Of a stretch of DNA of 64,000 bases, positions 1 through 22,179 are shown piece by piece. The DNA is from Styela clava. Taxonomy: Eukaryota. The notes beneath the pieces are model-generated. The model saw only the letters and a program-made list of their open reading frames with translations, was not told the DNA's origin and did no database searches. Made by a program: the position numbers and the translations under genes. Position 1 is the first letter of the stretch. Every line of letters starts with the position of its first letter. The stretch is from the NCBI RefSeq assembly GCF_964204865.1, contig NC_135254.1, forward strand, positions 15,438,001 through 15,502,000, given 5' to 3'.

Positions 1-1693
1 ATATTACTCATCTTCATGCGGTGTAAATTGTCTATGCAAGATTTACATATGAATTTAAAAAGTAATCGTTCTTTCAACAAAAATAACTCAGTGATTGTTG
101 AGCGGAGAATTTTTTGTTTTCGTATATGATTGAAAAAATGCTAGATTGAATCTCGAGCAAGTAAGCTTACAGACGTTTCCGCATAAACACAAACCGCATT
201 ATAACCTGTACTTATGAGCAAAGATTTTGCCTATAATTTTATTACAGAGATTAAACTATGAAATGGTAAACAGCAGGATTGGAATGAAGAGCAGAATTTG
301 AAGCTTTGAGAAGAGATTTTTGAGCTTTGTTTCGCGTAACGCTTAACTAGTCATAGCGTAAAAGAGAGTTCATTAAAGGTTCTTGTAGAGAACGTGATAA
401 TCGTTTGGATGGCAAATTTGTTGACCTGTATTTACTCTATTAAAGTGGATGATGAGCATATATAACTTTCCCTATCTACCGAAATATGCTTTCCGGAAAT
501 GCCGAGCGATGAGTCTTTTGTGGGAAAAACAGTTGCCACTAAAGTTCAATCAATATCGGTAAAACATCCCATCATTGACCTAATTTTCACCCAAGATCAA
601 ATACTGTGCATCTATAACACCAAGGTGAATATACCAAGGTTGTAAGGCATTATGCCGCATTTTGTGCCGCGATCTAACCTTCTTAACCTTATATTACTAG
701 TATAATATGCCGCTTTAATAGCACTAGCTATTGTTCGGCACGGTCGGAAGTGCCCCATCATTATTTTGCAAATAAGACTCAAATTCGCCATTAGAGATCA
801 CTATTAACGATCGGAAACTTTCGTCCATGTTTGGTCCAAATAGCGAATCGGACATTATTATCCACCATGCCAAGAACAGTGATATTCAACAGATACCTGA
901 CGACAACAATTTTCCAAACAAAAACGATCTTTTTTTTATGTATAGATCATAGACTACCTACCAAGTAGTGAGGTATTATCACTGAGCCATAGTAGATTGA
1001 TGATAAAATGATCGGTATAAATTATGCCCCGTCATATCATTTTTTCATTAAAATTATGACTCTTTATATGTCCGGGTTGGAATATAGCAATCTCCCAATA
1101 GGTCTGTATATATTTAAACAATGAGTCGCAAAAATATAATGAAAAGAGTGTGGAGGACTTGAGGGGACTGGGACTTGAGGAAGACCCATTTGATATACAG
1201 GCTAGACTTCATAATTCAGAAAAAGAAAATGTATATTTCAAATTTAAAATGAAAATAGCGAAGATTATGAGAATAAGTGAACATAACTATATAAAATATA
1301 CAGAGAACGCTCAAAGTAGGAATAATATTTTACATGGTAGCACGGATAGTTAAGTACATGACAATTGCATAATACTGTGACTGTGACAACGATGAAATAA
1401 ACTATACTAGTTTCAGATAACACTGCGTCTTAGTTATCTTGATAACATCATTCATAAGTAATATGATTCAAGAGACATATATCATAATTTTAATGAAGCA
1501 AAATTTTATTCACCGTGATAGATTACGATGAAGTGTTACTTGTAACTGAAAATTATTATGAAATATTGCGGACGTTGATGAAGTAATAGCATAGGTTAAT
1601 TAGGATATGATCAATTGCATTTGTCAAATCTTGTAGAATATTGATCTCATCTGTCTCATAATCTAATGATATAAAGACGAGTCTCAAGGTATC

Positions 1694-1796
1694 ATGACTT
1701 CAGTTAGAAAAGGGGCTTACGTGCCGTCCAAATCGTTTTCATTTTTGCTGCCGTTAACAGAAGACGAAGCCCTCGAAGAACAGAACGACGACCAAG
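1694..1796 (+). CDS. PLA2G4A: Candidate first coding exon of the cPLA2 gene (N-terminal extension MTSVRKGAYVPSKSFSFLLPLTEDEALEEQNDDQ)
   Basis: The exon at 3054 has no in-frame ATG and needs a phase-1 upstream exon. ATG at 1694 gives 34 codons +1 nt ending CAAG|GTTTGA, which is the right phase; the donor is weak. Confidence 0.5.
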
Positions 1797-2482
1797 GTTT
1801 GAATATTTTCAAATCAAGAGTGATTTCATGGATCTTGATTGGGCACATCTTGTTTTAAATGTTGCCGATGGACCCGGTAAATTATTTAGCTTTTGGAATA
1901 TGTGGAATTTTTGGAAAATTTTCAACGGGAACCATCAATTTACCGAAAATTCCTAAACTATATTGAACTATATCCATTGATATATTATATCGATAAGTTG
2001 CTATTGGGTAAATTTCATTCAATCTCTTAAAATATTATTAGATTTTAGGCGAGGCGGTGCGTATGTGATCTGCGTCAGTTACCATATCCGGTAATACGAC
2101 AGGAAAAAATAGGAAATATAAAGGCATTGTCATCTATTTGATGTTGATGTATTTTTTATTTGAGAGTACGCCAATATCTTGTTGGTTTTATTAAAAAAAC
2201 ATTTCATACATTTGCTTTTAACAAGGCTCTAAATGAGCAGTCATTGATGTGCTGTGAATTGTGAGATACCGTGCATGAAGTACAAAGATGTTTCTAGCTT
2301 GGCATACAACCTAATTTGGTACACATGGTTTGTTACTAATACGGTTATTATTCCGCACGGCTTGTTATAGTTTAACTCGTGTGCAACTAAAGTTGATCGC
2401 ATGCAATTTGAGAGTAAACCCGTGTCGAACCCGGACGTACACGCTGGAATTCGACGTGACAATTATTTTGAGCCCAAAATAG

Positions 2483-2553
2483 TTCATAAAGTGATGATTC
2501 TGATTAAAATAGCAGATTTCATAAAGTGATGATTCTGATTAAAAAGCAGATTT
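2483..2553 (+). repeat. ~35-bp tandem duplication
   Basis: ttcataaagtgatgattctgattaaaa(t)agcagat repeated twice. Confidence 0.85.
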
Positions 2554-3053
2554 TAAACAAAAGTGCGAACGCGAAAACGAAATGAAATTTTTGATTTTCG
2601 TTGCGTCCCGTTGCGTGTTTATATCGAATGCTTTTACAGCAATTTAAACGCAGTGTCTTTGTATACAAATAAGTCTATGTTTGTACAAAAATAAAACTAT
2701 TCAGACAAACCTTTCTAACATTCTAATCTGTGAATATTCAAAGCACTGCTGTAAATAAAAAAAAAACGAGAAAAGTGGATTAGTCGTGAATTCACTTTAG
2801 GCTCATTTTGTATTCATCTTGTTTTTGTGATCTAATCTCTTATGTATTTCTTCAAATGAATATTTCTCATTCATAAGCTTTATTTCCGTTAACTGACTTA
2901 AACTCTTAAGTTTTAAAATATTTCTAGGGGAATTTCATGCACGAAATGTGTCGCCGAATTCCTCGTAAACCCATTGTTGTTCGTCCGTTCTACATTTCTA
3001 CTCCAAAACAACAAGTATTTCAATTATGAATAAAAATGTTTTTCTTATTTCAG

Positions 3054-6000
3054 TTCGTGGAAATGGAGGGAAGACAGATCCGTTTCAATTCTTCGAGGTG
3101 AGTTACATTTTAACAAAAGGATTATAATTCAACTTACGTGTTGTCGCGAAGAAATTTTTATTTTTTTTGCAAAGCTCTGAAAATATTTGAAATGATTACA
3201 ACATTGATTTGTTCTCTTGTAGGTTTGATAAACAAAAATACAATTCTGATTTCCACGCCTTTACGAAGTATTTCGCCTTTTCGCTTTGTACAATCTACAC
3301 GAAGACCCAAAGGAATGAATATTTTCAACTTACCGTAGATTATCTTGCTAAAAGTATAATAATGGCCCATTTGACGTTGTTGGCGTAAAGAGCGTTTAAA
3401 CATGCCAACAACCACCAGACAAAGACGCCATTAATCATTTTTATGAATTAGACATTAGATATTAAAAATTATCCGATCATTTATATTTTTATATAGGTTG
3501 AACATGAGCCTTGCAATATGCTGCGAGTTCGAATCACGCGAGGAAGAGAAATAACAAAGGGAAGATTCGGGGATTTGAGTAAGCATATCAATCTACTCGT
3601 ATATATTACAAGTTACATTACTCGCTATATTTCCTGTGATCTATATATTCCCCTGCTTTATTTGGAATATTGGATCATAGGAAAGGGGGGGGGGGGGGGG
3701 GGGGGGTCCGTCCTATGATCTAGCCCGGGTGAGGATCTTCATGTGATCCGTAATATGAAGTAAACTTATGCTAAACTACATAATGTTTTGAGTTTTGGAT
3801 GAGGTATTTCAAAACTTGAAAGCGAAAGGGTCTGGGCATGCGGGTACCATTACGTAGGAGACCATGTGATTAATGATAACCTAACCTGATTTGAAAATAC
3901 GACAAGATCTACGAATTCTGGGGTTCTTTCCCCTAGCTATATTTGACTGAAAATGAAAATCATATTGGGAGCACATATATGAGTTATATATTTATTTCAC
4001 CAATTATTCGATTTATTTCAGAAAACGTTATTATTTTGACCTGATTTTCTGACCTGACAAGAATTGTTCAAAAATTGACAGCCATTCATGATTCATCCAC
4101 TTATTTGTGGAAGATGTAGGAAATACGCTTGAATGATTATGAAAACTAAATTTTTTCGATTTCACGAGTAAAAATTAATGTTTTTTTAGTGGATGTTCCC
4201 GATCCGTATGTGATTGTACACGTACCGGAAGCGCCTGATGGTCGAAAACAAACGCAAACAATTGATAATGATTGCAATCCAGAATGGAATGAAGAACTTC
4301 TTTTTTATCTCAAACCACAAACAGAAGAAAAACGGAAAATTATAGCACATGTAAAATTATAAATTTACTATCTATATAAGTCACCATTTTTACACAATAA
4401 CGTGAAAACACAATTTATATATTCTTGTGATAAAAGAGTGTACGATTTTGAACGCATTGCATCGGTTACTTATTGTCTGATTGTGACAATACTTTGATCA
4501 TTAATGACTTTTAACCCTGAGATAATGGTCATTTTAAGACTTATAGAACAGCCTTTGTTATGTGCTTAAAATGCGCTTGATAATCTTTTGCATACAATCT
4601 AATACAAAATGTCTTAATTTTATTCAACATCCCGCTTGGAAATATTTTTTAATATCGTGATTTTTAATGGCATTTTATCATACCCAATGTATCTTCTGTG
4701 TTGACTTTTAGTAATCCAAAAATTTCTAGTCAATTCAGGAAAATCTATACAATTTATTTTGCGTGATTTGGTTTTTGTCTAACGAGGCGAGACGAAGTAA
4801 CCTATTATCAGTGTAATTATTTGACCGCTGTTACGCATGACAAGCCTTAAGACCTCGGGGATAAGCGACCAAAATGCTAAACTATCTTATAATTCGAGTT
4901 ACCCATACTTAAGAAAATTGGAATAAATGAAATAGCATTATGATAGAATTGTATTTTCGTTGTCTATTTGAAGTAATTGGAATCGAATTTGATTTATTGC
5001 ATATGTTATTGAAAAATTTTTACTACATTTTTCATTATTTTGCAGATAACTCTCATGGATTCTAACTACGCTTTAGATGAAACAATTGGTGCGGTTGAGT
5101 TCGACCTATCAAAAGTACCAATGGATGAAACTTTGAAAAAAACATTTAATTTTTTTGAGGTAAAATTTAATTTTTATTCTTTTACTGTGTCTGACAAGAT
5201 TTTTTTAATTCAATCAAAATCAGCGATGTGTTGAAATATTCAGCCGAGGTATGTCTCTTTGGTGTGCCACGCTTGAAAATAATTGGAGAAATAGGATAAC
5301 ACACCTGTATAATTAAATTCTTAGTTGGCAGAATAGCCAGCCTCCTTGTCTTAAGACATTTTTTATTATTTAATATTCATTTCGTGCAATATATATATCG
5401 GAACCATTGCCAAGAACTGATGTAAATCAAGAGAACGTGAAAAAATCTGACATTGATAGATCCAAAAATGATCTGTATATTATTCAAATATTTTATGACA
5501 TATATATATATTATTTTTTATTGTAGACATCTGAAGTCGATATAGAATTCACGATGCAGTCAGTGTAAGTAAATTTTTTATTCAAAGTGTAACAGGGCCA
5601 TTGATTTGTTGTGCACGCCGTTGATGTCCTATATTGTCAGACATTATATTGCTGTAGACGCTACGTTTATATATATGCATAGAATATTCATATTTATATA
5701 CGGTACAATCAGCCATTGTGTTTTAAAACCAAGCTGTTTTTACAAATATCAGCTATTCTAGAAATATTTGAACATTATTTATACCTGTAATACCCGTCCA
5801 TTGCGTCGGTTTCAGACGATATGTTATAAAATATATTGAAACCAACCGTCTCCAATTATACTCGACCACTCTAAGGTTATTAAGGTAGCTTACTTTTTAA
5901 ATGACTGGCTATATAGCCTACGTGATGTATTGCGGAAGAATCAATCACGATCAGCCTATACTGTATAATATGCAAATTACCATCACGACAATTAACCTCT

Positions 6001-9000
6001 GCTGTCTAGGATATTCGGTGTGTGAGACATGGTGACACAATATAGTTTAATAATAATAACAAGGTGTCGTACATGCTAACGTGACTTTTTGGACAAGAAA
6101 TGGACCTATGAATCGTTTTGTTATTTGAATCGCTTTTTTTTATTAATTACAGGACCAATTGCTTTGAAATTTTCAGTGGTTAAAAATTGTTGTTGTCGCT
6201 AGAAGGCTATTACTTTTATTCATTTCAAAAATATCTGTGGCCTCTATGGGATTCGTTTTTCACTTCAAAGTTTGTGTGTTGACGTCATCAAAATCAAAAA
6301 TTGCGTGTCGTGGTTCAGTGGTCACATTTCAGTGATCTGGTGGTCAGACTACTGGTTTTGTGCAAATTTGATACGATTTCGTTTCGGCCTTCGTGACCAT
6401 ATATTTGATCACTGTTCTCTTGTTTTATCGTGGCCTTCCCTTTTTAGGTACAATTCAGATATAAGATGCAGTCTAGCACTTTGCGACGAAGAGAAACGAT
6501 TTCGCACAATGCGAAAAAAAGTTGTCTTAGAAGCAATGAGGCGTTCGATTCCTGCAAATGGGCCCAGAACTCTGCGAGAGGTATATTCTCAAACATTATC
6601 ATGCTACCAGTAATATATAGAACAGGATGGTTCAAGATTGTCAGCTCCGCGGGCCACAAAATTACTTTTGCATTGTTCGCGGGCCACAATAGTGCTAAGA
6701 ATTCGCTCATTCAACTTCGCTGGTTGCCTCAGCAAGCCATAACACTAGTCAATTCAATGACATTTGTGATGGGACAAAATATAACAGATTTTTTTTGGTC
6801 AATTTTGTGACGATGACAACACGAAATGCGATTTTTTGATTCCTCTCCGAATGCGACGCGGGCCACATGTGGCCCGCGGGCCTAGGTTTGGACCACCCTG
6901 ATCTAGAATATTTGCTACTCAGTAACCAGAAAGCATAGTTTTACTTATACCTTATTAAATGGAAAAGCTTTACCATACCTCTTCCAAAAATATTTTTTGG
7001 ACACGTTTAGTGGACATAACGATCGTTTCAATATTATGTTGTTATTGTTGTTATTATTATTATTTGTCTCCATCATTTTCAAAAAATCGCCTTTCTCTTC
7101 GAATACTGGACCAATTGCTTTGAAATTTTCAGTGAGTAAAGATTGTTTTTTTTTTGCCAGAAGGCTATTACTTTTATTTATTTCTAAATTTCGCATGAAA
7201 TCTGATATTTCGTCTAAAATTTCGCTGTATTATTTTATCCATGGAAACACTGGCTGTCCGGTTTGATTCTGTAAATTATTCCTACGCGAAACTCGGAATT
7301 TTTTGTGGGTACCGGTGGCGTCAAAGGTAAATACTGCTTCGCTCTGGTTAACGTGTCCATATATTTAAGCACAGCTTTCTTGTTTCTTATACACTTTTGA
7401 TTGATTTATTTAAAATATTTTTGATAAATAAAACAATTTATATATCGTCACGCTAATAACCGAATTGCGTAAGTCATTTTTGGCGATTTTGAGTTTTCTA
7501 TAAAATAGGTATTCATGTAATGCTGCGCACCTGTCTGTTAACTCAGATTTTATTTTAGGAATTCCAAAACCCATAAAAATGGAGATTTAGTATGACATGC
7601 ACATTTGTGCAATTGTTTCGTCATAATGGATTATCCTTGTTACCGCAGTACTATTGTGACGTCACAAAGGCAAAATAACCTCGGCGAAGTATTTTCGAGT
7701 TTTTGCATCTCGGATTCTAGCTTAGCGCGTATTAATTTGAATTTTTACTACAGTATAGGAAGACGTACACTTGTGATATTCACTGTCCGAGTCAAATTTA
7801 CTTTGGTTGGATTTTATATTGGGTACATTGCTGATTTATTCTTTATATTTAATTTTAGTCCTATTTCGGTGGGTGTGCAGAACGTGTTATATTGGTGAAA
7901 TATATATTTTTAAACATAAAAAATGATTTAATTGAAACTGATTAGCTATTTTGGGGATTAGACATTGTAGATACTGAGAATTACATTCGTTTTTGGAATG
8001 TTTAGTTTTCAGGACTGGTGCATATAGTGAAGTTGCAAATTGCGTATGTCACCAAGTCATAGACACATTTCTGCCTAAGTCACAGTGCGCCATTATGACG
8101 TCACTTAACTGCGTCATACAAATTAACTTAAATCCGGCTACGAGCAAAAAATTGAACCATGGCAAATTATTGACTCTCAATTGCATAACAAAATCATTAG
8201 GAAGTTTTTTACGTTTTTCTCAAAACTGCTAAAAATGACTTACGCAATTCGGTTATTAGCGTGACGATATTATTCAATATATATTTATATTAGACGCCAA
8301 CGGTTGCAATTCTTGGATCCGGTGGTGGATTTCGTGCTATGACCGGATATGCCGGAGCAATGAAAGCTCTTTACGACTCTGGAATTTTGAATTGTGCAAC
8401 ATACATCGGAGGGTTGTCTGGATCTTCATGGTATATAGAAAAACTTTCAGAATATATTTAAACATCGTGACCTTTGTTTGAATAAAACTTTCCAAATAAT
8501 GCAGTGCGTATTTCAAAAAGCTGTAGAAGGTGTAATATGTTTTAGGGAAGTAAAATGACATTACTGTAGTAATCTAACGTTGGAAGATTAATTTCAAATT
8601 GTTATTCTTTACTCAGTTACCTCAGTACCCAATATCCTCATGATGATTTGCCGCGACTTGGTTTATTGCCTATGATTTACACATGGGCCAATGACTTACC
8701 TAATTGCAACCGACTTACTTATTTGCCATCGACTTACTTAATCGCCAACGACTATTTCATGAACTTACCTAATCGCCACAGACTTACTCAATCACCATCA
8801 ATCATTGATTTAAAACCTTTACCTTTTATTCAGGTACCTCAGTACCCTCTATTCTCATGATGATTTCCCGCGACTTGGTCCATCAGTAGTAAGTCAAGAA
8901 ATTCGAAGTAGTATTGAAACAAGTTGGTTATGGTTTCTTGGTCCTGAAGGTTTGATGAGATACAGCAGTAGATTGAGACAAAAGCGAAAACAGGGCCAGC

Positions 9001-12000
9001 CTGTCACATTCACGGACTTTTTTGGAATGTTAATCGGACAAATGCTACTTGGAAAAGAGGTAATACTAACATGAAATGATGATATGAAAAATTTGCATAC
9101 TTGATGAAGGTGACTTCAGTTCTAGAATAATATTGTGACGTCACCATACTTTCTTTCTAATGGTCCCTCATACGTCGAGATTATATTTAAAGGTAATCGC
9201 GGTAATCTATATTTTACATGGTGAACCCAAACAACGCAAGGCTTCACGAAAATGAAGTAAATTTTCCAACACTTGAACTCATGTTTGTGTATAATTGTAC
9301 CCAAAAATTCCAATAATTTAGAACGATTCGGACAAAAGTTTTGTTCCAAATGACGCTGTATATCAAATTGTGTTCCCTTTCTGCTAATATTAGCTTTCTT
9401 TTCTCTCGTGTACTCTATAAATATATGAAATTTATCTGATTATTCATTATAGAAAATGGAAAATCGTAAATTGTCGGATATGCAACTTAAACTCAAGGAT
9501 GCATCTCTACCAATGCCTATATTCACCTGCCTGCATGTGAGATCAAATATGTCAGCCATGACATTCCATGGTAAAACATCATTACAGTTTGCGTTATTTC
9601 ATCACGTTAGGTATATTATTGGATCTTCCTTTAAACTCGTTATGTATACAGATTGGGTCGAGTTCACTCCATATGAAATTGGAATCGCAAAATACGGAAC
9701 GTTTCTCAAAACAGAATATTTTGGAAGCAAATTTTTCATGGGCGTTCTTGTTAAAAAATACGACGAAAGTCCGCTACACTTTTTACAAGTGAGTTTTGAT
9801 ATGGTTATGGCTACTTTTTGTTGATCAATTTTTCATTGGAAATTGGAAATTGAGATATTTCAAGACAAATTTGAATATTTTTTAGGGAGTGTGGGGAAGC
9901 GCATTTTCGATTTTATTTAATCGATTGATCGAAAAGTCTAATAAAGATGGAAATAACGATTCAAACTCAAAACATGAAGATGAAAGAGAAGCCTTAAGCA
10001 AAGAAATGGGTATGTTTTCAATTAGACAAGATTTGCAGAGTTAACTTTTAGGGTTAGAATAAACAGTTTTAAAGCAATGCACAAATGGTGAATAAATATT
10101 AAAAACTTTGAGTATATACTCTCTATAAAAAAAAACTCTTCTAGAGTATTTTACTCACGACCTTTTTTGATATTGTATGCAGAATATTTATGTCTACATC
10201 TAATTTGCTTATAAAAAACTTATTCCACCTCAACACAAAAGTAATGTTGCCAAATCTTTAAGCTGGTATCCAGGCCAGCGGAGGTAAGAATCCTGACGAG
10301 GAAGATTCTGAGGAGGAAGATGCTGATGAAGAGGACGAAGATGAAGATTTCGTGGACGCACATGAAAATTTGGAGCATATCAAAGCTGCACAAGAGTAAG
10401 CAGATTCTATTGCCTCATGAAATGGTGTATGAAATATTGTCATTTTCACATAACAGTGTAAAATGAATGCCAGTTGTTAAATCGCATGTACAGTTACTAG
10501 AAAAGCATTTTGAAAAGGATTGTATGGACAATATGTTTAATTGTGTAAACCATATGACCACTCATATAATAATTTTGAGCATCTGTTTGTGCTATAACAT
10601 CTAACACATTACTAACATTTTGACATACAGCAATGCTCAATGCAGCACTTTGGTGACTTCACTTTTATCTAAAAGATTGTTTTAATAGGCAGTTTCATGA
10701 TTAATATTGTGTGTGGTGGCATATTCCAGGAAAAACTTTCTTATTTGACTGAAGATGCTTTGTTCAGCAATGTGAATGTATTGCAACTAGGGTGCATAAA
10801 TACATGTATAAAGAAAACTCCGCATGATGTATAAATAATTTTATATAACGACCAGTTATCACAGCGTGTGTACCAGAATACTACAATACCGATTGCTATA
10901 TATAATTCATCAGAAAATTGCATTAAAACAAAGTTATTTCCGTGTCATTTCAAAGTGAGCATCCAGCGATCAATTGCTGACCAGTTTTGCTTTCATCATT
11001 ACATAAGAATGAATGCATGGCGTTTGATGTGTTCACGTAACAAATTTTTAATAATGAATATATCATTAATCATGTCATATTCATTTCACTATGTCACCTC
11101 ATCATGCACCATTTATGTCAATTTCAATGTATAATTCACAGTACATTAACTAACAAAAATCATGCTTTATTTGGAAATATTCGAATTAGAACATTCTGAT
11201 TTGAAATTCGATACAAAAATGAAATTTTCGAAATTTACATCCATACTCATTTCTGAAGCGCTAATCGTGAAAACAATTTGACAAAATTATGTATCATAGT
11301 TCATAATGATTCAGCACTATCCATCCTGCCTATTTATTTAATAGCTTCACGTTAAATTCATTTTACGTTATTCATTTCGTTTACACTAACACAGACAAGG
11401 ACGTCGCCATACATGGTTTACAGGAATCACACGGTCACCGGCAATACGCGAAAGACCAAGGTATAAAACATTCAGCAAGTTATATTTATTTTTGATTGTT
11501 TGCATGTACATAAATGGCATCAGCTTTATAATTTCTGTCATTTTATTTTGAATGTTTTTTTGTGAATTAAATTCAAAACTAGATTTTGATAGAACGTCTG
11601 AAATGATTCACAACAATGCATAAACTTAATAAAAGTGCTTGAATAATTTTTTTTCTTTAAAACCAAGTTACAGATTTATCTATGTTAATTTGCCTTGATA
11701 TTTATCACACAACGAAATACGTTCTTTGTAGAGTTTCAAACTTTCAGTCATTTCCCATAGGTAGAACGTTGTCATGTAACAAACACGTGAAAAAATATGT
11801 AATATTATCAATAAAAACCAAATCATTAGGGTAAGCTATTATCGCATATCGTGATTGAAATGGACTACTATATTAAAACTTACATGAAGTAATATATACA
11901 TACACATCAGTACAGTATACAGTAAATAGGGTATGAACTGATGTCTTTTTTTAAATATTGATAAAGTCAAAACAATATTGTTTTTATCGAAAATAATATT

Positions 12001-15000
12001 GGTTGCTTCTGCTTTTGTTAATTAGACTTTGGGCAGCGTTGGAAGCTGCTTTTCCGACTATCTTTTCTTATATTTTAATATTTTCAAATCTGTAATTCAA
12101 TTTTTCCTCAAATTATTTTTTACTTATCTGTTGTATTCTGACAACTTCTGTTGGTTGCATTTTTGTTTTATAAATTATTAGTTTGATGAACGTTATTCTC
12201 AACGTTTGTTACTACCTCTTTCTACTTTCCACCCAAGTCTTCTTATATATGTATGTCTTCCATGATATACACATGTATACTATATATATATTTGTATATA
12301 GTATGCAGTATATTTACATATATATAACATTAAGCAATAGATGAACAAAATATTGTTTCTCGTAATATCGAATTTTGTGAAACAAGATTTTGCTTTGTTA
12401 GACTATTGTGGCATTTTAGGTCCCACGGGCCGCATGAGCCCGCCCAAGCATTTAGTGCGACCCCCCTCCCTTCCACCCCTGCTCTTGAATAAAGTTGTAA
12501 AAATTCATTTTGTGAGCATTAATTGGTGTTGAGTTATTTTCCTTTGTCAACCAAATTTGAGTCAGATGATGTTTTCTCTATGTCATATATATTTCTTCAA
12601 AAGCATTTAATTCAAGATATTTTACATGTAAATTTTAACTGTGAGTAACTTGTAGCCTACTTCTCTTAAAGTGCTTAAACTCTTTGCATAAAAGATTTTA
12701 TGAATGCAGCCCTTGGAATGAACTTCGTCAACCACTGAACTATTATCTTCATCTTGTATAGGCCGTGGCGTGATCCACATTACATGAGGGTAAAATATAA
12801 AATTGGAACGAAGTATAGTCGCACAACCACTTAAAATATTTTTTGTATCCAATTTTGAATTACTAACTGGATTATTGTTTTGGCAGCATTGATAAGAAAC
12901 GGGGAAGCATGTTTTCACTTGGAAACCTGTTTTCTTGGGGATCTCCGGTAAAAAAACTTTCACCAAAACAACAAAGAAGCGCTTCGGCTGCTCCACAACC
13001 AAAACAATCCATGTTGAATAGCTTTGTTTCCAACATGTTCAACTCTTATGCTATAATGCAGGTAATGATTACGTCAATATTTGCAACACGTTAGACATTC
13101 CAAGATTCAATTTAGCCAATTGTGGTTTGCTCGCGTACATTATCATTACCCACAAGGCCATATTTTGCTATCAATCACCTGGGAAAGTTGATGGTAATTC
13201 TTAAGCTGTGTAAACAGGAGTTGTTCTCATTTTTCATGTCCGAACCAATTGGTTTGCAGGATTAACCGGATCTCAGGCTGTCGTGTTTTACCGATCTATT
13301 AAATTTAGAACCGATAGGGATCCAAAGGTAATTTTGTTTAATGAAACAAATCATATAATTTTTGACGGATGTGGTAATTGTATGCTATCAGCGCACTGAA
13401 TATAGGTCAGACTGTAGTAGTTCTATATTCAAAAATTGATACTTCCGTAGTGTGTGTACCAGGTTAGAGCCATAACTTTATTCCGATTTTCCTTATTTTA
13501 GTTCTATTATATACGAGTTCGGGGACCGTCTGTGTTAGCCAAGTGAATATACCCCCTCGTACCCCTGCCCATAGGTTTCAGTCCCTTCGAACAACTTGAT
13601 GTAAAGTACGCGAACAAAATTAGTTATTATCCCTTCCAAGCGGTGTAAATAACAAAAGGTCTATTTTTCCAGACGAGAGAATTTCGTGCTGGTAAGATAT
13701 TGAACTACATGAGAGGATTGTCGCTGAGTAACACTTATCCAATCTCTCCTTTTGCTGGCGCCGATCATATCGCTGAAGGTAAGAGTCGCGGTGACCGTAC
13801 ATTTGAACCCACGTACATTTGAACCCATGTGTATATCCGCGGGTTCAATATATATGCGGGTGCTAAAACCCATTAGGGTTAGTATGGGTTCAAATATCCG
13901 TAAAATAAAAAAAAATTGCATAGATGCAATAGTATGCAGGTGCAATTGTCGTGGGTTCAAATGTACGTGGATTCAAATGTAATGGAAACAAGAGTCGCAA
14001 TTCTTTTCATATCTGGATTACCTTATTTAAAATTTGGACACGAAATGGACCTATGGATTGTGTTGTTATTATTATGTTGTTGTTCTTGTTGTTGTTAATC
14101 TTCTTCTTGTGAAAAATTACTTATTAAAATTACTGGATCAATTGCTTTGACCAATGCTAAAAGATTGTATTTTCCACTAGAAGGCTATAACTTTTATTTA
14201 ATTCAAGAATTTCTGTGGACTGTATGGGATTCGTTTTGGATGTGCTATGACGCTAACCAAATTAAAAATGGCACACCTTGTGGAGGTTCCGCTTTCGCGT
14301 AATTTGATCTGGTGATCAGGCGAAGTGGTGAATACCGGTAGTCAACTATGGCGGATTTCATACCGGTATTACTGTGTTTTGGTCTTCTTGTACATACATT
14401 TGAGCATCACTCTATTGTTCAATCATCATATCCTTGTAAAACTAAAGAAACTTGAATAAATATTCAGTACAACCTGTTGCAATTTAGTTTTTTAACCAGA
14501 TATTGTAATTATTTTCAAATTTTTAATTTTTGAATAGTGGATGAATTCAAACATGTTACCGAAGCCATGGAATGCTTCCGTAAAAAAGTACATTTAGTTG
14601 ACTCCGGACTGACATTCAATACTCCATACCCTCCTATACTCAGACCACAGAGGGGAGTGGATTTGATCATCTCGTTCGATTTTAGTGCACGACCATCTGA
14701 CAATCACCAGCCTTTCAAGGTAAGGAATATGTCAGTAGTGAAATAGGTAATCGTCCGTAACGTGTCAAATCATGTTTAAATGTCCCCAATATACATATAT
14801 ATAACAGGATAACCACCATTTGTATTCTTTATTTGAAGGAAATTCTTCTAGCAGAAAAATGGGCACGTTTGCATGGAATTGCCTTTCCAAAAATTGACGT
14901 TTCGGTTTACGATCCAGAAAATATGAAAGAATGTTATGTCTTCCAAGATACGGGCAACGAGCGAGCTCCAATAATTATTCATTTTGTACTTTGCAACGAA

Positions 15001-16138
15001 CAATTCAAGAAATTTTCCAAGCCAGGTAAGAGAGTTATATATATATATACCGAATGAATGCTATGTATATATTAGATCTGTTGGTCTACAGTTTGGTTCA
15101 GGTTTGCAGTCCGCTGTCTTTCGTTTTAGACTAAAGTTTTTGGGTTCAAGCCTCCAAACAAACAATTGAACATTTCAGAACAAATTTAAAAATTCGGAAT
15201 GTTTCTCCAATGTTACCTGTGTCAATACATTTGGCATACGTAAAGCTAATATTTAAGTCAGAATTTGAATTTATATATATTGAATATTCTGAGCTCAACT
15301 TCTCTCCTAGGTAATCCTCGCACATTGCGAGATGCAAACTTAATATTAAATGTTTTTGTCGTATGTTTGAGAACATGTTACTTGTAACCTTGTTCTTGAA
15401 CGCTTCTTTACTTTTTTTCTATCTTAGGTGTTCCACGAGAGGCAGGTGACACCAGAGCAGATTTTAGTATCTTTGACAATCCCAAAACTCCTTACTCAAC
15501 TTTCAATTTCCAATATTCTCATCAAGCTTTTGATGATTTGCACGATTTAATGGAATTTAACACGCTACTAAACATCGAGGTAAAGTTATAGAAATTGCTT
15601 TTTATCGGGCTAAAATTTTGGTTCACTTCGTTCATGTTCAATTGTCATAAAAATGTTATTTTAAGTACCTGAACTGTAAAATATTAAGAACAAATGAGAT
15701 TCAACGCCAAAATCATTCTTTCTCAATCCAATCAAAAGTAAATTTTCAGTCAGTAACTTTAAAAAAGCTAAATTCTGTTAAATTTGATCTTATCAATCCG
15801 AATCCAAATTCTTTAAGTTTAAAAATTACAACAACCGACGTCTAAGTTTAAATAAAATGTTTTTTTTTAATTTCAGAAGATATTTTTTAAATCTTCCAAT
15901 ACTTTTTTGAAATAAATTAATTTCGCAACATTAAATAAATATATATATAAATAATTTATACTATTTTACACAGACAATAAAAGAGCAAATCCAGCACTGT
16001 GTTCAGTTGCGACGTCGCTCGAAATCGAGATGCTCAATCACCCTAAACGACATTAGAAAATCACGACACTTGACCAAAAAAGGAAGAAATATTCTGGAGA
16101 AAGTTCTACATAACAAAGATGCTTTGTTTCTTGATTAG
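3054..16138 (+). CDS. PLA2G4A: Cytosolic phospholipase A2 group IV (cPLA2-alpha-like), multi-exon
   Basis: Phase-consistent GT-AG exons: 3054-3097, 3497-3578, 4190-4350, 5046-5159, 5527-5564, 6448-6580, 8294-8430, 8834-9059, 9453-9570, 9652-9788, 9886-10009, 10263-10395, 11395-11460 (possible cassette), 12887-13061, 13673-13778, 14538-14719, 14839-15025, 15428-15579, 15974-16138 (TAG 16136-16138). Translation shows DPFQFFE-VEHEP, C2 Ca-loops (GDLMDVPDPY, DNDCNP, LMDSNYALDETIG), GSGGGFRAM, GGLSGSSW nucleophile, DWVEFTPYEIG, GVWGSAFSILFNR, YPISP, VDSGLTFN (catalytic Asp), SRCSIT. Confidence 0.95.
3685..3706 (+). repeat. Poly-G tract (~22 G)
   Basis: Homopolymer in a cPLA2 intron. Confidence 0.9.
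6090..6400 (+). repeat. Abundant dispersed repeat family (other copies ~7000-7350, 14035-14400, 18690-19020 reverse, 54250-54380)
   Basis: Recurrent blocks aaatggacctatg, ggaccaattgctttgaaattttcagtg, agaaggctattacttttatt. Confidence 0.8.
6623..6900. mobile_element. hAT-type MITE in cPLA2 intron
   Basis: Imperfect TIRs CAGGATGGTTCAA / TTGGACCACCCTG, near-identical 8-bp flanks ATATAGAA / ATCTAGAA, internal gcgggccac repeats. Confidence 0.8.
7445..8267. mobile_element. MITE with ~48-bp TIRs and TA flanks (Tc1/mariner-like)
   Basis: TCGTCACGCTAATAACCGAATTGCGTAAGTCATTTTT at 7445 is the exact reverse complement of the sequence ending 8267; TA on both sides. Confidence 0.85.
8294..8430 (+). CDS. 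PLA2G4A: cPLA2 catalytic exon (oxyanion hole GGG-R and GLSGS serine nucleophile)
   Basis: Translates TPTVAILGSGGGFRAMTGYAGAMKALYDSGILNCATYIGGLSGSS(W), bounded by tag| and |gtatat. Confidence 0.97.
13790..13988. mobile_element. Small foldback/MITE-like element with subterminal tandem-inverted repeats
   Basis: (tacatttgaaccca) x2 on the left and (gg[g/a]ttcaaatgta) x2 on the right; central ttagggttag. Confidence 0.7.
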
Positions 16139-16473
16139 ACTATTCACTTTATAATAATTATAATATACTCATATTGCACGTAACACCATTGGAGTAAACA
16201 TTTCCGGCTGTTTAAACTTGGTCCGTTGATGAACTTTAAAATCATATTATGTAGCTTTTTTTGTTTTCTGGCAGTAGCTTCATTTAAAGTCTATAAGGTG
16301 AAAGAATTGATAACCAAAATATGACTGACGAGAGAAGTATTTCTTACGAAATATGATTTTACTTGATTGTAAACATTATTGTTGCAACAATTTTTATTCT
16401 TGCACATTTTATGCCTTATTTTCTTGTTTTTTTTATTGGTTAGTTTTCACTTTTTTCAGTTATTTTGTACATA

Positions 16474-16479
16474 AATAAA
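16474..16479 (+). terminator. Putative polyadenylation signal of the cPLA2 gene
   Basis: AATAAA ~340 nt after the stop codon, following a U-rich 3'UTR. Confidence 0.45.
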
Positions 16480-19400
16480 ACACTAATAAGAATATAACAA
16501 CTATTTGTAGACTATGTTGATTAAGCCATTTTCTAGAATGTTGAGCTTTTACCTACGCAGATAATAGAAAAATAATAAAAGGAAAGACATACTTTTTGGA
16601 GATTTATGGAATCAGATGCAAACCATGAAATGATGGTGAACGCTTTAACAAAATTCATACTTAAAGTTCGATACTAATAGACTTGAACCATATCATATGT
16701 CACGCGTATTGTTCAACCAATACAAATTTTTCGAAATTATGTTTTCAGTATTCATACATTCAACTGTAATCATCGCTGTCATCTCCAGTATAGATTGCAT
16801 CAAAACACCTATAATGCTACCTATTTTATGTTTGCTTCATATAGATACGATAGCTGATAACTCATAATTGGAATGTTAGAGAAGGGCTGTTTAGGCAATT
16901 CCTCTGTGGTGAATAGGAAATTAATTTGAATAGTAGGCCTAATCCTATATGGGAATATCCTTTCTTTCGACCTAACACGGCAGCAGGCAGCAGACGACTC
17001 GTATGTAGTGGTAGAATTCAGGGGACTTGAGCTAACCCCTGCTCGAATTATCGCGATAAGTAGAAAACCCGTTGTTGTCTAGAGTTAGATCTTACGCGAC
17101 TGCAGCAATTGGGTAACGCGCACCGTAGCAGAAGACTAGTTATATTTAGCAGTTATGTATTATTTTTAAGTAAAGCGTGTCGCGTTAATTAAGGTTGCTT
17201 TCATAAGGGCATACATAATTTTTTGAAATGAGGGAATTTGTTGTTAGTAAGTTCGATACAAAAAAGAGCCTGTTTTTCAATTTTTGAAGCACACCTCATT
17301 TTGAATCACGCCCGTAACAAACCACATAGTTCAATATCAGTCACATGTATGTTCGTATATAACATTTGTTTTAAAAACATATAAGATTTTTTTAAATGAA
17401 TCAGCCAAATTTGAGACTGTCTGAGATTCATATTTGCATCTCAATCACGCTGGCATGGTGGGCACGCTTCCATCCTGGCCTTGCTGAGAGAGAGATAAAG
17501 AGGGAGAGAGATATCTATTGTTTCGTCAAATAGAAAACAAGCAATGGTGATATATATACAAGTTAATTTTGGGGACTAGACTTGGGGAAGCGATGCGACC
17601 ATAAGGTCATCAGAGTCATCTCATTTCCCTCCAAGTTCAATATTAAGATTCACAGTTAATGTATATAAACAATGTATATATAAAAGATATACTTGTTGGA
17701 GAGTTGACTAAAGACTAAATCCTTTACAGAATTTTTTTTGGTTTTAGCAACAAAATGGTACGACTTCCACGAGTTCAGAATTCTCGAGTAAAATAGTTAC
17801 GCTAAGTTAATCGTATTAAATGCAACACAGTCATTACCAAAGACTGCTCGGGCTGTAAAAGCCTCTGATTTTCCTTTTTTTTTATACTGTAGTAGTATTG
17901 TCACGCAAAATGTGAGAAACTTCTGATATATATATATAAAGTATTTACATTCTACAGTCTTGCATTGTTACAGCTGTTCTCAACGCTATTCAGACCTAGA
18001 AGTTTTACTCAGAGATTAGGCCACGTCATGTGCTTGGCTTTGTTGTGACGGTATATCACGTAGTCGATATCGAATTGCTGGCGATATTTCTTCCTCAGCG
18101 AACGTGCTGTCAGATCAGGAATATCATCATAATTTCCATAACGCAACCTTGGATTTCGCCTTAATTTTTTCCTGGAATAAATAGAACTTGTAGGTACGAC
18201 TTGTAGATGAATTGCATTTAAGTACTTGCAATATTCATATACATATATATATCCTAATATTTATTAAAATAATCTTTTCACATAGATACTGCAAAAATTG
18301 TCAAAATAATCGTAGACAAATGTGCTAATTAAAACCAATTTCCAAACCCGATACGAGTGCCAAAATAGCTCGATTATTTGTGCTGCAAACACGATTTACC
18401 AACTTGGGAAATGTAATTTGATTTTGCGCTGTACAGTTCTCATAACAAAGCTATTTTATCTGCGTGTTTTCTTAGTTAGACCATTCCGATATCTTGTTAT
18501 AGCTGTAACAATGGGATGAAGTACAAATATGAGCATGCATGGAATATTTTGAAAAATAAAACAGAAATGAGCGATTATGAGCTTAGTTCATAGACTTCTC
18601 ATAAGCATATAACACAAGAGAGTGGCGCTCAAATATATGGACACGAAAGTCAAAACAAAGTAGTGTGAGAATGCAATATGTCACAGTCGAATACCGCTAC
18701 CGTAGTGTTCATTACTTCGCCTGACCACCTGCTCGCGAATCTGGAATCGCCACAGGGTGTGCATATTTTAATTTCGATGACGTTGTCGCACACAAAAACG
18801 GACACTTAGTCTAGAGCTCGCAAAAATCTTTGAAATAAATAAAAGTAATAACCTTCTAGCGAAAAACACAAAACTCAACCACTGAAAATTTAGAGGCAAT
18901 TGGTCCTGCAGTTAATGAGAAAACAACAAGAATAACGTAACAACAAGGATGATAATTAGAAAAAAGAATTCTAAGAACAACATAAAAAACAAAACGATCC
19001 TTATGTACATTTCGTGTCCTATAATCTAAAGAGAAATCGTTCAGAAGTTGCGATAATCCCCATTTTACGCAAAATGAAGCTTCAGGTATTAAAATCTAAA
19101 ATGTCCCTACCCATACCCAAGCAATCTTCTGTATTCAATTTGAAAAAAATTAATGTTTTACTATTTTATCAGACCTTAACATTTCGTTTTCTTTTCCAGT
19201 AGTTTCTATTGCCGTCTCGCATTTACCGCAATGCTTGTGAATAAGAGACAAAAATATCCTTGTGGCTCTAAAAGTATGTTCATAATTCAATATAAAAAAA
19301 AAAAAATTTGTTTGTAAAGAGTTACATTAAAATACATTGAGATATTTTTTGCATTTGTGTGTAATATTTTATTTGGTATGTAAGAAGGAAGTAATGAAAC

Positions 19401-22179
19401 CAAGCACGCTTACACTTAGGAGTCACAATTGAACCTAAAAACAGAAAACCTTAGTAGTTTGTTAGGAGAGATAATTTTAGATTCTATAAACCAAATATGC
19501 TCCGTGTCCGCCTTGATGGATTATAATGGTAGCGGTGTTGGGTCACGCAATTGGAATATGTCTTCCCATAACAGGACATAGCATACACCCATGCTAACAT
19601 CCAGTTCATATATATATACGAGATATTATTATCATTTACACATTGAACATACATTTTATAATAACACGTTAGAAAAGACAAAATATGTCCAAATCGGAAT
19701 TCGACCTGAAAAGCATTACAATAAGGTCAGCCATCAGTCAATAACAACAGAAGACCACTAAAGCAGTAAATATCTATTCCTAGCAATTGAGGAAATAGAC
19801 ATTTGTTAATTCCTAACGTCTGGAAGCGTTTTTTCTCTTGATTGTCTGTTTTATAGTTTTTTAAGTGAGGGTAGGCAGTGCCCTTCAAAGACCTAGCACC
19901 AAAATAAAATTTGCGAAAGAGTCATTGAAACCTATGCTTTTTAACCGATTTACCGTAAATCCTTACCTATTACTTCGACTCAATTTTAGAATAGCTTCAT
20001 TTATTCAAGTGTCATTTACACACAAAAAAATCTGAAATCAAGGAAAAAGTTTCCCTATTAACGTATGAGAACAGAACCTGATGATTGTTTCAATGGGACG
20101 CGAATGGGAAATCAATGGTCGGTTGTACGTTTTTAGATTATTTGAAAAAACCCCTAACCATATTCACCTGATTTCACTTTCCACGTAAATCATGTTCGAT
20201 TTCTTTGTGATGTCAATATTCCTTAATTCCTGTTCCATCAAGCAATTCAATCGAAGAGCTCTATTTCTTGTATTTTTGTAATTCGATTTTGATGAATTAC
20301 CGTCGATACTCATTTTCAATATAATGTGTTATAAAAATATTCGCTATTTACATTTATTTTACGAAAATAGCTTTCTATCCTTCTTTGTACTGTATATTCA
20401 AGTCGTATTTTACGCGATGTGGATGACTGCCCACAAAGTCAGTTATAGATAAACCTACGCTCCTCGATGAAAAATAAATTAATATTTTCAATAAATTTAG
20501 ACAGACCTTCCAGGTAATGTATTCCCTTCTACAAAATCTGAAACTACAGCGTGCATCTGTATCAATGAAATACATTCTGTCAAACAAATGGACATCAAAT
20601 ATATTGTCCTGCACAGAGATTTTTTTTTGAGTGAAGCGATTCTAACGAATGAAGTTAGTAACTGAGATACGTTGTAACTCAACTCAAATTAGCCATAAAT
20701 ATAAATGGTGATTCTTAGCGTAAAAGAAAACAAGAAACACTACACCTGTGCGACAGATCTGTCTAACTTCCAATCTCTAAGTTGCTAAAACCGACAGCTC
20801 GTTTTTCCAAGTAGCCTACTTTGGCTGTCGTAAATACCTAGATCAGAAAGGGCCAATCCGCACTTTCACATAGGTTTGATTGTTCAAAATGTCCACATAC
20901 ACAACAATTCTCCGGTGCGCGCCTACTCATATGTATAAATAATACTCTTTCAGGTTTGCTTTCATTAAAAACATTAAAACTGTTCAGTCAGTCTCATGAA
21001 AATAATATTTAGGTGTCAACATTATAACAGCGCTGAAATTAAATTGACGCAGTTCAGGGTACTTTTGTATTTGTTCTTTTACTTGTTTGGTTATTTGCGC
21101 TAAGCTGGCCTATAAATTAAGCATATATACATATAAATCCACAGGTTTAATAAAGATTTGAGTAACATCTTCAATACTATAAACCGATTTAAAGTAATGA
21201 ACCTATGATGATGATCAACTGTTAAGGCTAAGAAATATACAAGGTCAAACTTTTTTAATTGGACAAACTTCTTAAATGCAACTTGTTATATATATATACA
21301 TGTATATATGAAGTGTGTCATGGAAAATCATTTATGCCATTTTATATGTTTCTTTTTTATGCAGTCTATATTTATCTAGCATTCACCGGGTGCTAAATGC
21401 TCATGTCTTACACATTGTGGTTGTTTTCATACATTTGCGAAATACTCTCAGTCAGAGATTCACCAGAAAAATAAATCTGTCATGCGAGTTTAGAGTCAAT
21501 CCTCGATGTACGGAAATACTTCTACAATTATATATATACAATACTATTCAATGGGGAACTGCTGACTCTCGGGTCACAAAGCATGACCCATCATGTTTTT
21601 ACGAATTAATGCAAAAAACATACTGGACTTAAAATTTCAACAGTAAGCTGAGTATAGTAGGCTACATCGTTACCAACTGCCAACAGTGCCTTCACAAATC
21701 TTATAGCATACAATGGATCTGATAACTTTTGTAACTTTCACAAATTGGCATGGTTTTGAGGAGATTGTTTCTGTTTATTACAGCAGTTACATTTTAGAGG
21801 TGCAATGGTTCTGGAAGTATCCGAGAGCCATACTCATGTTCCTTTGCCGTTCATTCTTCTTTGGCATTCAGTGTCGTTTGGAAAACATAATTTTGTTGAC
21901 TTGAATTAGAAATCTGAAATGAAGATGGAGCGGGATGGTGGTGACTTTACTTCGGTTGAGAGTAGATCGAAGACGATAGTAGAATTTTCTTTCAAACTCT
22001 TTCGAATGTAGGAGAAGTTTTTACCCAGCATTGTTTACGTCTTTGTTTATACTTATACACGCGAACCCGTGTTTTCACACACTAACATAAGTTGCATAAA
22101 ATCGAGTATCTGTAATCGTCACAGTCCTGAAAAAAGTGCTGTTTGTGTAAAGATCAAAACTGCGCACTATCTATGAGCA

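What the first reader, a model, noticed from the sequence alone, without database searches (positions are those of the whole stretch)
10295..10366. FFAT-like ER-targeting (VAP-binding) motif inserted in a cPLA2
Seen: exon 10263-10395 encodes DEEDSEEEDADEEDEDE-DFVDAHE, a long acidic tract directly followed by a near-consensus FFAT core (consensus EFFDAxE) with F at position 2, D4, A5 and E7. Known: FFAT motifs bind the MSP domain of VAP-A/B and place lipid-handling proteins (OSBP, CERT, Nir2) at ER contact sites; mammalian cPLA2-alpha reaches membranes through its Ca2+/C2 domain and, to my knowledge, has no FFAT in this disordered region. Inference: this enzyme may be constitutively ER-tethered or bridge ER (FFAT) and a second membrane (C2), acting as a contact-site phospholipase.
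Basis: partly seen in the sequence, partly recalled or inferred. Interest (0 to 1): 0.75.

Follow-up and report, generated by a model that had tools for sequence, protein, structure and literature searches.

The report
ER-docking motif in sea-squirt cPLA2
A sea-squirt copy of the lipid-signalling enzyme cPLA2 carries, in a floppy acidic loop, a short expressed and conserved peptide that looks like the tag other lipid proteins use to dock on the endoplasmic reticulum, and the vertebrate enzyme lacks this tag.

Summary
Window 10295-10366 (+) encodes DEEDSEEEDADEEDEDE-DFVDAHE inside exon 10263-10395 of a cPLA2-alpha orthologue. The gene matches RefSeq 'cytosolic phospholipase A2-like' of Styela clava, where the motif is residues 539-545.

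- **Expression:** the exon is spliced into contigs of 3 of 3 RNA-type runs from 3 studies, and is present in 11 of 11 RefSeq isoform entries.
- **Conservation:** in the homologous loop of four other ascidians (Ciona intestinalis, C. savignyi, Phallusia, Clavelina), the aromatic at position 2, D4 and A5 are kept behind an acidic tract. Positions 1, 3 and 6 vary. VAP pockets hold positions 2 and 5.
- **Receptor:** the same genome encodes a VAP whose named pocket residues are identical to the mammalian ones.
- **Score:** on a scale back-derived from Mikitova & Levine 2012 the motif scores 1.0, and 0 of 500 loop shuffles reach that.
- **Wider pattern:** FFAT-like motifs recur in cPLA2-like proteins of spiders, malacostracan crustaceans, dragonflies and molluscs. 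25 of 92 non-vertebrates score 2.5 or better against 0.9 expected, versus 0 of 40 vertebrates.

VAP binding and ER tethering remain inferred. The motif is a change within an existing acidic loop, not an insertion. Three full-text searches found no report of it.

The parts
10263..10395 (+). Motif exon (133 nt, reading frame from 10265). It encodes the acidic tract and the FFAT-like core.
   Evidence: Spliced joints 10009>10263 and 10395>11395/12887 in X1, X3, X9. Matches P0277 residues about 512-555.
10295..10345 (+). Acidic tract DEEDSEEEDADEEDEDE. The six residues before the core are all D or E. It holds one Ser in a CK2-like context.
   Evidence: Flank penalty 0.
10346..10366 (+). FFAT-like core D1 F2 V3 D4 A5 H6 E7.
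   Evidence: Score 1.0. D4 and A5 are invariant and position 2 is F/Y in 5 of 5 ascidian orthologues.
9886..10009 (+). Upstream exon (GVWGSAFSILFNRLIEKS...SKEM). It ends the conserved catalytic N-half and starts the loop.
   Evidence: I place the true junction at 9788|9886 (GT..AG), from P0277 reading HFLQGVW.
11395..11460 (+). Alternative in-frame 66-nt cassette exon, a basic 22 residues (QGRRHTWFTGITRSPAIRERP), directly after the motif exon.
   Evidence: Joints 10395>11395 (X1, X9) and 11460>12887 (X1, X3, X9). Skip joint 10395>12887 in X9 only. 9 of 11 RefSeq entries include it and 2 skip it.
12887..13061 (+). Loop exon (IDKKRGS...NSYAIMQ).
13673..13778 (+). Exon TREFRAGKILNYMRGLSLSNTYPISPF, where the conserved catalytic domain resumes.
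14538..14719 (+). Exon with HLVDSGLTFN (the Asp of the catalytic dyad) and SFDFSARPSD.
14839..15027 (+). Catalytic-domain exon EILLAEKWARLHG...KPG.
8294..8446 (+). Exon with GSGGGFRAM and GGLSGS (the lipase nucleophile motif). Bounds are taken from the tblastn match only.
4186..5231 (+). Two C2-domain exons (about 4186-4359 and 5034-5231). Bounds are taken from tblastn only.
   Evidence: Pfam C2 on P0277 residues 95-202.
15415..16135 (+). The last two coding exons (about 15415-15582 and 15971-16135). Bounds are taken from tblastn only.
   Evidence: The loose end after 15027 reads into GVPREAGD.

Best explanation
The exon encodes a genuine FFAT-like short linear motif in the disordered acidic loop of the catalytic domain of the Styela clava cPLA2-alpha orthologue.

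Proposed mechanism (inferred):
- F540 then enters the pocket that holds FFAT position 2, and A543 enters the small pocket that holds position 5. D542 pairs with the lysines.
[quoted passage not shown] The Ca2+-dependent C2 domain is intact, so it could engage the same membrane or an apposed one.
- Phosphorylation of Ser in the tract, and inclusion of the adjacent basic cassette exon, could tune the affinity.

Shown: sequence, expression, position-specific conservation, presence of the receptor, and recurrence in other phyla.
Inferred: binding, localisation and regulation.
For: 1. **Expression.** The exon is in spliced contigs of 3 of 3 RNA-type runs from 3 studies. The motif is in 11 of 11 RefSeq isoform entries of the gene.
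2. **Gene identity.** The protein has C2 and PLA2_B domains. It matches 1CJY at E 9.5e-226 with GGGFRAM, GLSGS and VDSGL conserved. Tunicates are sister to vertebrate cPLA2-alpha in a quick tree.
[quoted passage not shown] Its nearest tested relatives are the AKAP220 second motif DFVTA-E and AKAP110-T4D DFLDA-E. The latter targeted the ER with TSR 1.32 despite a weaker flank. A scale back-derived from their Table 1 reproduces 10 of 10 rows and gives this motif 1.0. 0 of 500 shuffles reach that score.
4. **Position-specific conservation.** In 61 ungapped loop columns of five ascidian orthologues from three orders, only 4 are invariant. Two of these are D4 and A5, and position 2 is F/Y/Y/Y/Y. 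Positions 1, 3 and 6 vary. F2 and A5 are the pocket-bound residues (PMC7610837 passages).
5. **Receptor.** Styela VAP exons read CFKVKTTAPRRYCVRPNSG and KHKFMVQT. These stretches are identical to mammalian VAP-A/B over the pocket residues named in the review.
6. **Recurrence.** 25 of 92 non-vertebrate cPLA2-like proteins score 2.5 or better in the loop or C-tail, against 0.91 expected from shuffles. Vertebrates give 0 of 40. 8 of 8 spiders carry [IVMT][FY][FY]DAE[ED] in the same loop. 13 of 15 crustaceans carry a C-tail motif scoring 3.5 or better, 11 of them of the form [DE][FY]xDAL[EDQ], and Macrobrachium carries the canonical EFFDAEE.
7. **Disorder.** The loop lies on the disordered side of the charge-hydropathy boundary and the catalytic halves do not.
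Against: - No binding or localisation data exist for this protein.
- On my scale C. intestinalis (KYWDAAE) and Phallusia (EYSDAAQ) score only 3.5, with shuffles reaching that in 7% and 16% of trials. In the 2012 yeast assay, motifs lacking 2.5-3 or more elements did not target the ER. However, the validated ACBD5 core VYCDSME would also score 3.5.
- Position 3 is not aromatic in Styela, Phallusia or Clavelina.
- Seven unnamed tunicate-like sequences from marine metatranscriptomes keep the acidic tract but have no aromatic residue.
- Clavelina paralogue P0171 has a degenerate version, and six other Clavelina paralogues have none.
- Amphioxus (0 of 3) and vertebrates lack the motif.
- FFAT-like matches are common in acidic disordered sequence. 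2,079 of 20,373 human proteins score below 3 for the phospho-FFAT form.
- My scale is a back-derivation, not the published matrix, which sits in supplements I could not see.
- Related sequences are not independent, so the shuffle counts overstate significance.
Confidence: 0.6

Rival explanations
1. Neutral resemblance. An acidic disordered linker holds one aromatic residue followed by D-A, inherited from the ascidian ancestor without being a binding site.
For: Acid-rich loops make FFAT-like matches easy. Scores of 3.5 in C. intestinalis and Phallusia are reached by 7-16% of shuffles. The motif is lost in the unnamed tunicate-like sequences and in paralogues.
Against: Only 4 of 61 ungapped loop columns are invariant across three ascidian orders, and two of them are D4 and A5, next to a kept aromatic. 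Independent clades (spiders, malacostracans, molluscs, dragonflies) hold FFAT-like motifs 27 times more often than shuffles predict. Macrobrachium has a perfect EFFDAEE.
Confidence: 0.17
2. A real short linear motif read by a different partner. Candidates are another MSP protein (MOSPD2), an adaptor that reads acidic-aromatic peptides, or a protease cutting after D in x-x-x-D|A.
For: The conserved elements (acidic run, aromatic, D-A) are shared with other acidic-aromatic motif classes. A second MSP-domain locus exists in the genome (C18, 35 bits). From recall, human cPLA2-alpha is cut by caspase-3 at a D-x-x-D|A site elsewhere in the protein.
Against: - The residue three places after the aromatic is an invariant Ala, not the L/I/V that LC3-interacting motifs need (motif definition recalled).
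- The P4 residue before the D|A is D, K, E, E, E, so an executioner-caspase site is not kept.
- The pattern of conserved versus free positions is the one expected for the VAP groove.
Confidence: 0.15
3. An intramolecular regulatory loop. The acidic, phosphorylatable segment folds back on basic surfaces of the C2 or catalytic domain, or on the basic cassette exon, to gate activity, with no outside partner.
For: From recall, the homologous vertebrate loop carries phosphorylation sites. A basic 22-residue cassette exon lies immediately downstream and is alternatively spliced.
Against: This does not explain why the aromatic, D and A specifically are kept while the charge pattern drifts. It also does not explain why other phyla place FFAT-like motifs in the C-terminal tail instead.
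Confidence: 0.05

Closest known systems
Human cytosolic phospholipase A2 alpha (PLA2G4A; PDB 1CJY)
   Same: C2 plus PLA2_B architecture, with GGGFRAM, GLSGS and VDSGL motifs. E 9.5e-226. Both have an acidic Ser/Asp/Glu-rich loop with one aromatic residue at the homologous place.
   Different: The vertebrate loop ends ...EDAGSDYQSD, with no D4-A5. The best FFAT-type score in 40 vertebrates is 5.5. The Styela loop is longer (169 versus about 90 residues in my loop windows). Vertebrate targeting is known to go through Ca2+/C2 (established knowledge).
FFAT-like motifs of AKAP220 (DFVTA-E) and AKAP110 (DFLTA-E; T4D variant DFLDA-E), Mikitova & Levine 2012
   Same: Same D1, F2, aliphatic position 3, A5 and E7. 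The T4D variant, which has D4 like Styela, targeted the yeast ER with TSR 1.32.
   Different: The Styela flank is fully acidic (6 of 6), against lSSiEE. The AKAP motifs are predicted to be helical and need phospho-mimicry at position 4. The host proteins are unrelated.
Canonical FFAT clients: OSBP/ORPs, CERT, Nir2/rdgB (EFFDA-E)
   Same: An acidic tract plus a core in an unstructured region of a lipid-handling protein that also has a second membrane-binding module.
   Different: Those are lipid transfer proteins with F at position 3. This is a lipid hydrolase with V at position 3, and binding is untested.
ACBD5 FFAT-like motif (VYCDSME), a validated VAPB tether
   Same: A sub-optimal core that still binds, helped by a phosphorylatable acidic tract. 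It is comparable to the Y-type cores of Ciona, Phallusia and Clavelina.
   Different: ACBD5 is a tail-anchored peroxisomal protein. Position 5 is Ser, which can switch binding off. The ascidian motifs have Ala there.

Membership tests
Group IVA-type cytosolic phospholipase A2 | N-terminal C2 domain | tested here: met
   Pfam PF00168 on P0277 residues 95-202, E 2.3e-13. C2 exons at window about 4186-5231. Residues aligned with the human Ca2+-loop residues are conserved (the identity of the ligands is recalled).
Group IVA-type cytosolic phospholipase A2 | PLA2_B lipase domain with the GXSGS nucleophile, the Asp of the dyad and the GGGFR arginine | tested here: met
   PF01735, E 6.4e-80. GSGGGFRAM, GGLSGS and HLVDSGL align with 1CJY.
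Group IVA-type cytosolic phospholipase A2 | Orthology to vertebrate PLA2G4A rather than to lineage-specific paralogues | tested here: inconclusive
   In a quick ML tree the tunicate clade has SH-aLRT 99 and is sister to vertebrates at 98. Styela groups with Ciona and Phallusia on short branches. The careful search did not finish, and vertebrate PLA2G4B-F were not included.
FFAT / FFAT-like VAP-binding motif | F or Y at position 2 | tested here: met
   F (10349-10351). F/Y in 5 of 5 ascidian orthologues.
FFAT / FFAT-like VAP-binding motif | Acidic (or phosphorylatable) residue at position 4 and a small residue (A/C/S/T) at position 5 | tested here: met
   D and A, both invariant in 5 of 5 orthologues. 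Requirement as given.
FFAT / FFAT-like VAP-binding motif | Acidic tract in the six residues upstream | tested here: met
   EDEDED..., 6 of 6 acidic.
FFAT / FFAT-like VAP-binding motif | Cytosolic, unstructured, non-helical context | tested here: inconclusive
   The enzyme is cytosolic by family. Mean hydropathy of the loop is 0.362 against a boundary of 0.437, and of the motif exon 0.314 against 0.56. The loop is rich in indels and poorly conserved. That the homologous human loop is invisible in 1CJY is recalled, not checked.
FFAT / FFAT-like VAP-binding motif | Critical residues conserved among orthologues more than their neighbours (criterion C of Mikitova & Levine) | tested here: met
   4 invariant of 61 ungapped loop columns, 2 of them D4 and A5. 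Position 2 is class-conserved.
FFAT / FFAT-like VAP-binding motif | Score within the range of motifs that target the ER | tested here: met
   1.0 on a scale back-derived from Table 1 of PMC3261905 (10 of 10 rows reproduced). The paper's cut-off for detectable targeting is 2 or less. The published matrices themselves were not seen.
FFAT / FFAT-like VAP-binding motif | Receptor present: VAP with an intact FFAT groove | tested here: met
   G000 C17 exons match VAP-A/B MSP at E 3.7e-21 and 1e-12. KVKTT, VRPN and KHKFM are identical to the mammalian sequence (residues named).
FFAT / FFAT-like VAP-binding motif | Physical binding to the MSP domain, lost on mutation of position 2 or 4 | not testable with these tools
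   Needs a pull-down, ITC or a recruitment assay.

The most novel reading that the evidence does not exclude
Docking on VAP through an FFAT motif is an old and widespread property of animal cPLA2-alpha-type enzymes. It is kept or repeatedly re-made in the loop (ascidians, spiders, venerid bivalves) or in the C-terminal tail (malacostracan crustaceans, dragonflies, gastropods, a nemertean). Vertebrates and amphioxus lost it and rely on Ca2+/C2 and phosphorylation alone. Invertebrate cPLA2 would then be an ER- or contact-site-resident phospholipase.
Probability: 0.35. Interest if true: 0.75.

Novelty: new member of a known kind. Interest (0 to 1): 0.62.

Why it matters
cPLA2-alpha releases arachidonic acid for eicosanoid synthesis. 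Where it sits in the cell decides which membranes it hydrolyses and which downstream enzymes receive the product. In mammals, placement is explained by the Ca2+-dependent C2 domain.

A conserved VAP-binding tag in the invertebrate enzymes would add a phospholipase to the list of VAP clients, which is dominated by lipid transfer proteins. It would give a Ca2+-independent route to the ER or to ER contact sites. It would also raise the question of why vertebrates gave it up.

The idea is directly testable with peptides, with human or ascidian VAP, and by electroporation in Ciona embryos.

Tried and rejected
**Alternative splice site.** I considered that the acidic stretch might be intronic, because a strong donor-like GTAAGA sits at 10286. 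I rejected this because contigs of 3 RNA-type runs carry the whole exon, and no listed joint uses that site.

**Finding close relatives.**
- The big representative search with exon 14540-14719 gave no hit above 72% identity, and most hits were genomic exon fragments.
- Word searches seeded with returned full-length proteins (P0067, then P0170) found the orthologues and finally the Styela clava RefSeq protein.

**Published FFAT matrices.**
- Slee & Levine 2019 and Murphy & Levine 2016 are not held.
- The matrices of Mikitova & Levine (Table S2A) and Di Mattia (Table EV4) are in supplements, which are closed and which I did not request.
- I therefore back-derived penalties from Table 1 of PMC3261905. 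The values for V, W, S and D at position 3 and Q and G at position 7 are my assumptions.
- Those unseen papers and supplements may already list cPLA2 homologues among predictions.

**Other checks.**
- Other motif classes (LC3-interacting, PP2A-B56, gamma-ear/AP-2, SUMO-interacting, caspase) were considered from recalled definitions and rejected, because the invariant Ala and the variable P4 do not fit them.
- Disorder of the human loop in 1CJY: two papers opened said nothing on it.
- Rfam on window 1-20000 gave no match.
- Earlier scan notes near this place: none.
- The careful tree search did not finish in 288 s, so only the quick tree is reported.
- My loop anchors failed on 4 spider proteins and on 2 others, so the 25 of 92 count is an undercount. 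Those four spiders were read by eye.
Full report
**What is there.** Window 10263-10395 (+) is an exon with AG before it and GTAAG after it. Read from 10265 it encodes GIQASGGKNPDEEDSEEEDADEEDEDEDFVDAHENLEHIKAAQ. The reported span 10295-10366 is the acidic tract (10295-10345) plus the core DFVDAHE (10346-10366). Open stretches on the + strand from about 4150 to 16135 carry C2 and cPLA2 lipase sequence.

**Expression.** I laid four coded runs from four studies on 9400-15399.
- X10 has flat depth and none of the GT..AG exon joints listed below, so it behaves as DNA.
- X1, X3 and X9 carry contigs that skip introns with GT..AG ends. The joints, with the tool's stated cut offsets applied, are 9570>9652, 10009>10263, 11460>12887, 13061>13673, 13778>14538 and 14719>14839.
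- The joint the tool printed as 9786>9884 I place at 9788|9886 (see parts).
- The 10009>10263 joint is present in all three runs.
- From 10395 the contigs go to 11395 (X1, X9) or straight to 12887 (X9 only). So a 66-nt in-frame cassette exon (11395-11460) follows the motif exon and is sometimes skipped.
- Contigs cannot give expression levels. The run labels are guesses, and it is the splicing that shows RNA.

**Identity.**
- A representative search with the exon at 14540-14719 gave only distant hits (349 at E up to 0.001, best identity 72%).
- One hit, P0067, is a Clavelina lepadiformis cPLA2-like protein.
- Searching with it and then with a Ciona orthologue returned P0277, 'cytosolic phospholipase A2-like isoform X2 [Styela clava]'.
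- The exons of P0277 match the window at 95-100% where the matches do not run into introns.
- The window is therefore Styela clava or a very near relative, and the gene is already annotated.
P0277 stands in for the spliced product, and the joined step was left out.
- The motif is P0277 residues 539-545. It is in 11 of 11 RefSeq isoform entries, and 2 of 11 lack the cassette.
- P0277 has C2 and PLA2_B domains. It aligns with human cPLA2-alpha (1CJY) at E 9.5e-226, with the catalytic motifs kept.
- In that alignment Styela 493-541 lies on human 411-457, which ends ...EDAGSDYQ. The loop is therefore homologous, not inserted. Vertebrates keep an acidic tract and a Tyr but not D4-A5.

**Motif quality.**
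- The published matrices were out of reach (supplements closed).
- From the Methods and Table 1 of Mikitova & Levine 2012 I back-derived penalties that reproduce 10 of 10 table rows.
- On that scale DFVDAHE with its flank scores 1.0. The paper's limit for detectable ER targeting is 2 or less, and only 76 human sequences met it.
- The nearest tested motifs are AKAP220 DFVTA-E and AKAP110-T4D DFLDA-E (TSR 1.32).
- 0 of 500 loop shuffles reach 1.0.
- It is the best of 80 candidate positions in the protein. The next best scores 3.0 and lies inside the C2 domain.

**Conservation in ascidians.** At the homologous loop position:

| Species | Flank and core | Score | Fraction of shuffles reaching it |
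|---|---|---|---|
| Styela | EDEDE-DFVDAHE | 1.0 | 0 |
| C. intestinalis | SDDED-KYWDAAE | 3.5 | 0.07 |
| C. savignyi | SDDEE-EYWDASE | 2.0 | 0.004 |
| Phallusia | SEDDE-EYSDAAQ | 3.5 | 0.156 |
| Clavelina X1 | DDTDS-EYDDAVE | 2.5 | 0.006 |

- Of 61 ungapped loop columns, 4 are invariant: D501, R503, D542 (position 4) and A543 (position 5). Position 2 is F/Y/Y/Y/Y and three tract columns stay acidic.
- Positions 1, 3 and 6 vary.
- A review states that F2 and A5 sit in VAP pockets and the acids contact the basic face.
- The validated ACBD5 core VYCDSME would score 3.5 on my scale, so the weak scores do not exclude function.

**Results against.**
- Clavelina paralogue P0171 reads DSDNDYAVEH, which is degenerate.
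- Six further Clavelina paralogues have nothing better than 3.5.
- Seven unnamed tunicate-like sequences from marine metatranscriptomes keep the tract but have no aromatic residue.
- Amphioxus reads DSDDD-EFCQQST.
- In a quick tree the motif-bearing proteins are the short-branch tunicate orthologues. The expansion and the unnamed group sit on long branches.

**Receptor.** The same genome has VAP exons on contig C17. They match VAP-A/B MSP domains at E 3.7e-21 and 1e-12. KVKTT, VRPN and KHKFM are identical to the mammalian sequence.

**Beyond tunicates.** I scanned 132 labelled cPLA2-like proteins. The 132 are the named proteins I chose, plus two unnamed tunicate-like proteins and 40 vertebrates. 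The remaining unnamed Logan/JGI rows and the other vertebrates were left out.
- A score of 2.5 or better in the loop or C-tail occurs in 25 of 92 non-vertebrates, against 0.91 expected from shuffles.
- It occurs in 0 of 40 vertebrates, where the best loop score is 5.5.
- 8 of 8 spiders have [IVMT][FY][FY]DAE[ED] in the loop. The scorpion and the horseshoe crabs do not.
- 13 of 15 crustaceans have a C-tail motif scoring 3.5 or better, 11 of them of the form [DE][FY]xDAL[EDQ]. Macrobrachium has EFFDAEE (score 0).
- Two damselflies and the dragonfly Ladona, several gastropods and bivalves, a nemertean and a flatworm also carry tail or loop motifs.
- Related sequences are not independent, so these are counts, not probabilities.

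**Literature.**
- Full-text searches for FFAT + cPLA2 (13 papers), cytosolic phospholipase A2 + VAPA/VAPB (12 listed) and FFAT + PLA2G4 (5 papers) showed no report of an FFAT in a cPLA2, judging by listing.
- I opened one of them (PMC11321999, passages). There FFAT refers to MIGA2.
- A VAP interactome review has no occurrence of cPLA2, PLA2G4 or phospholipase A2.

**Verdict.**
- The FFAT reading is the best-supported explanation (0.6), but it is computational only.
- The gene is known and the motif class is known. Their combination appears undescribed, so this is a new predicted member of the VAP-client class.

Noticed in passing
window 11395-11460: In-frame 66-nt cassette exon encoding a basic 22-residue segment directly after the FFAT-like exon. 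It is included in X1 and X9 contigs and skipped in one X9 contig. 2 of 11 RefSeq entries skip it. It could modulate the neighbouring acidic motif.
   Followed up: partly
window 13400-13670 and 13780-13990: Very high-copy repeats flank exon 13673-13778. Summed contig depth is 10^4-10^5 or more in all four runs, against about 45 for neighbouring DNA. They contain inverted GGGTTCAAAT/ATTTGAACCC units and look like small interspersed (MITE-like) elements. No Rfam match.
   Followed up: partly
L004 (G000 C9:8542302-8552301, minus strand), about 2490 on the reverse complement: A divergent Styela cPLA2 paralogue (37-41% identity) has, in the interval corresponding to the loop, a 103-codon open stretch reading ...SQSSDE-DFYDARM (my score 2.0). 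Six other paralogue loci had nothing at 2.5 or better.
   Followed up: partly
P0167 residue 85 and P0168 residue 187 (Ciona intestinalis long isoforms): Further FFAT-like candidates (EYQDCLS and GYADAGE behind acidic flanks) lie in the N-terminal extensions of Ciona isoforms. Styela's N-terminal extension has none.
   Followed up: no
window 9451-9788: The 81-nt intron 9571-9651 has no stop and is in frame, so 9453-9821 reads as one 123-codon open stretch. Retaining the intron would keep the frame.
   Followed up: no
window about 1670-1960: Alternative first exons: the N-termini of RefSeq isoforms (MTSVRKGAYVPSKSF..., MDLDWAHLVLNVADGP...) match open stretches upstream of the C2 exons.
   Followed up: no
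G000 contigs C9, C18, C3 (two), C17 (two), C1: At least seven further PLA2_B loci lie in the same genome, two of them as close pairs. Together with the Clavelina expansion this points to lineage-specific cPLA2 gene families in ascidians.
   Followed up: partly
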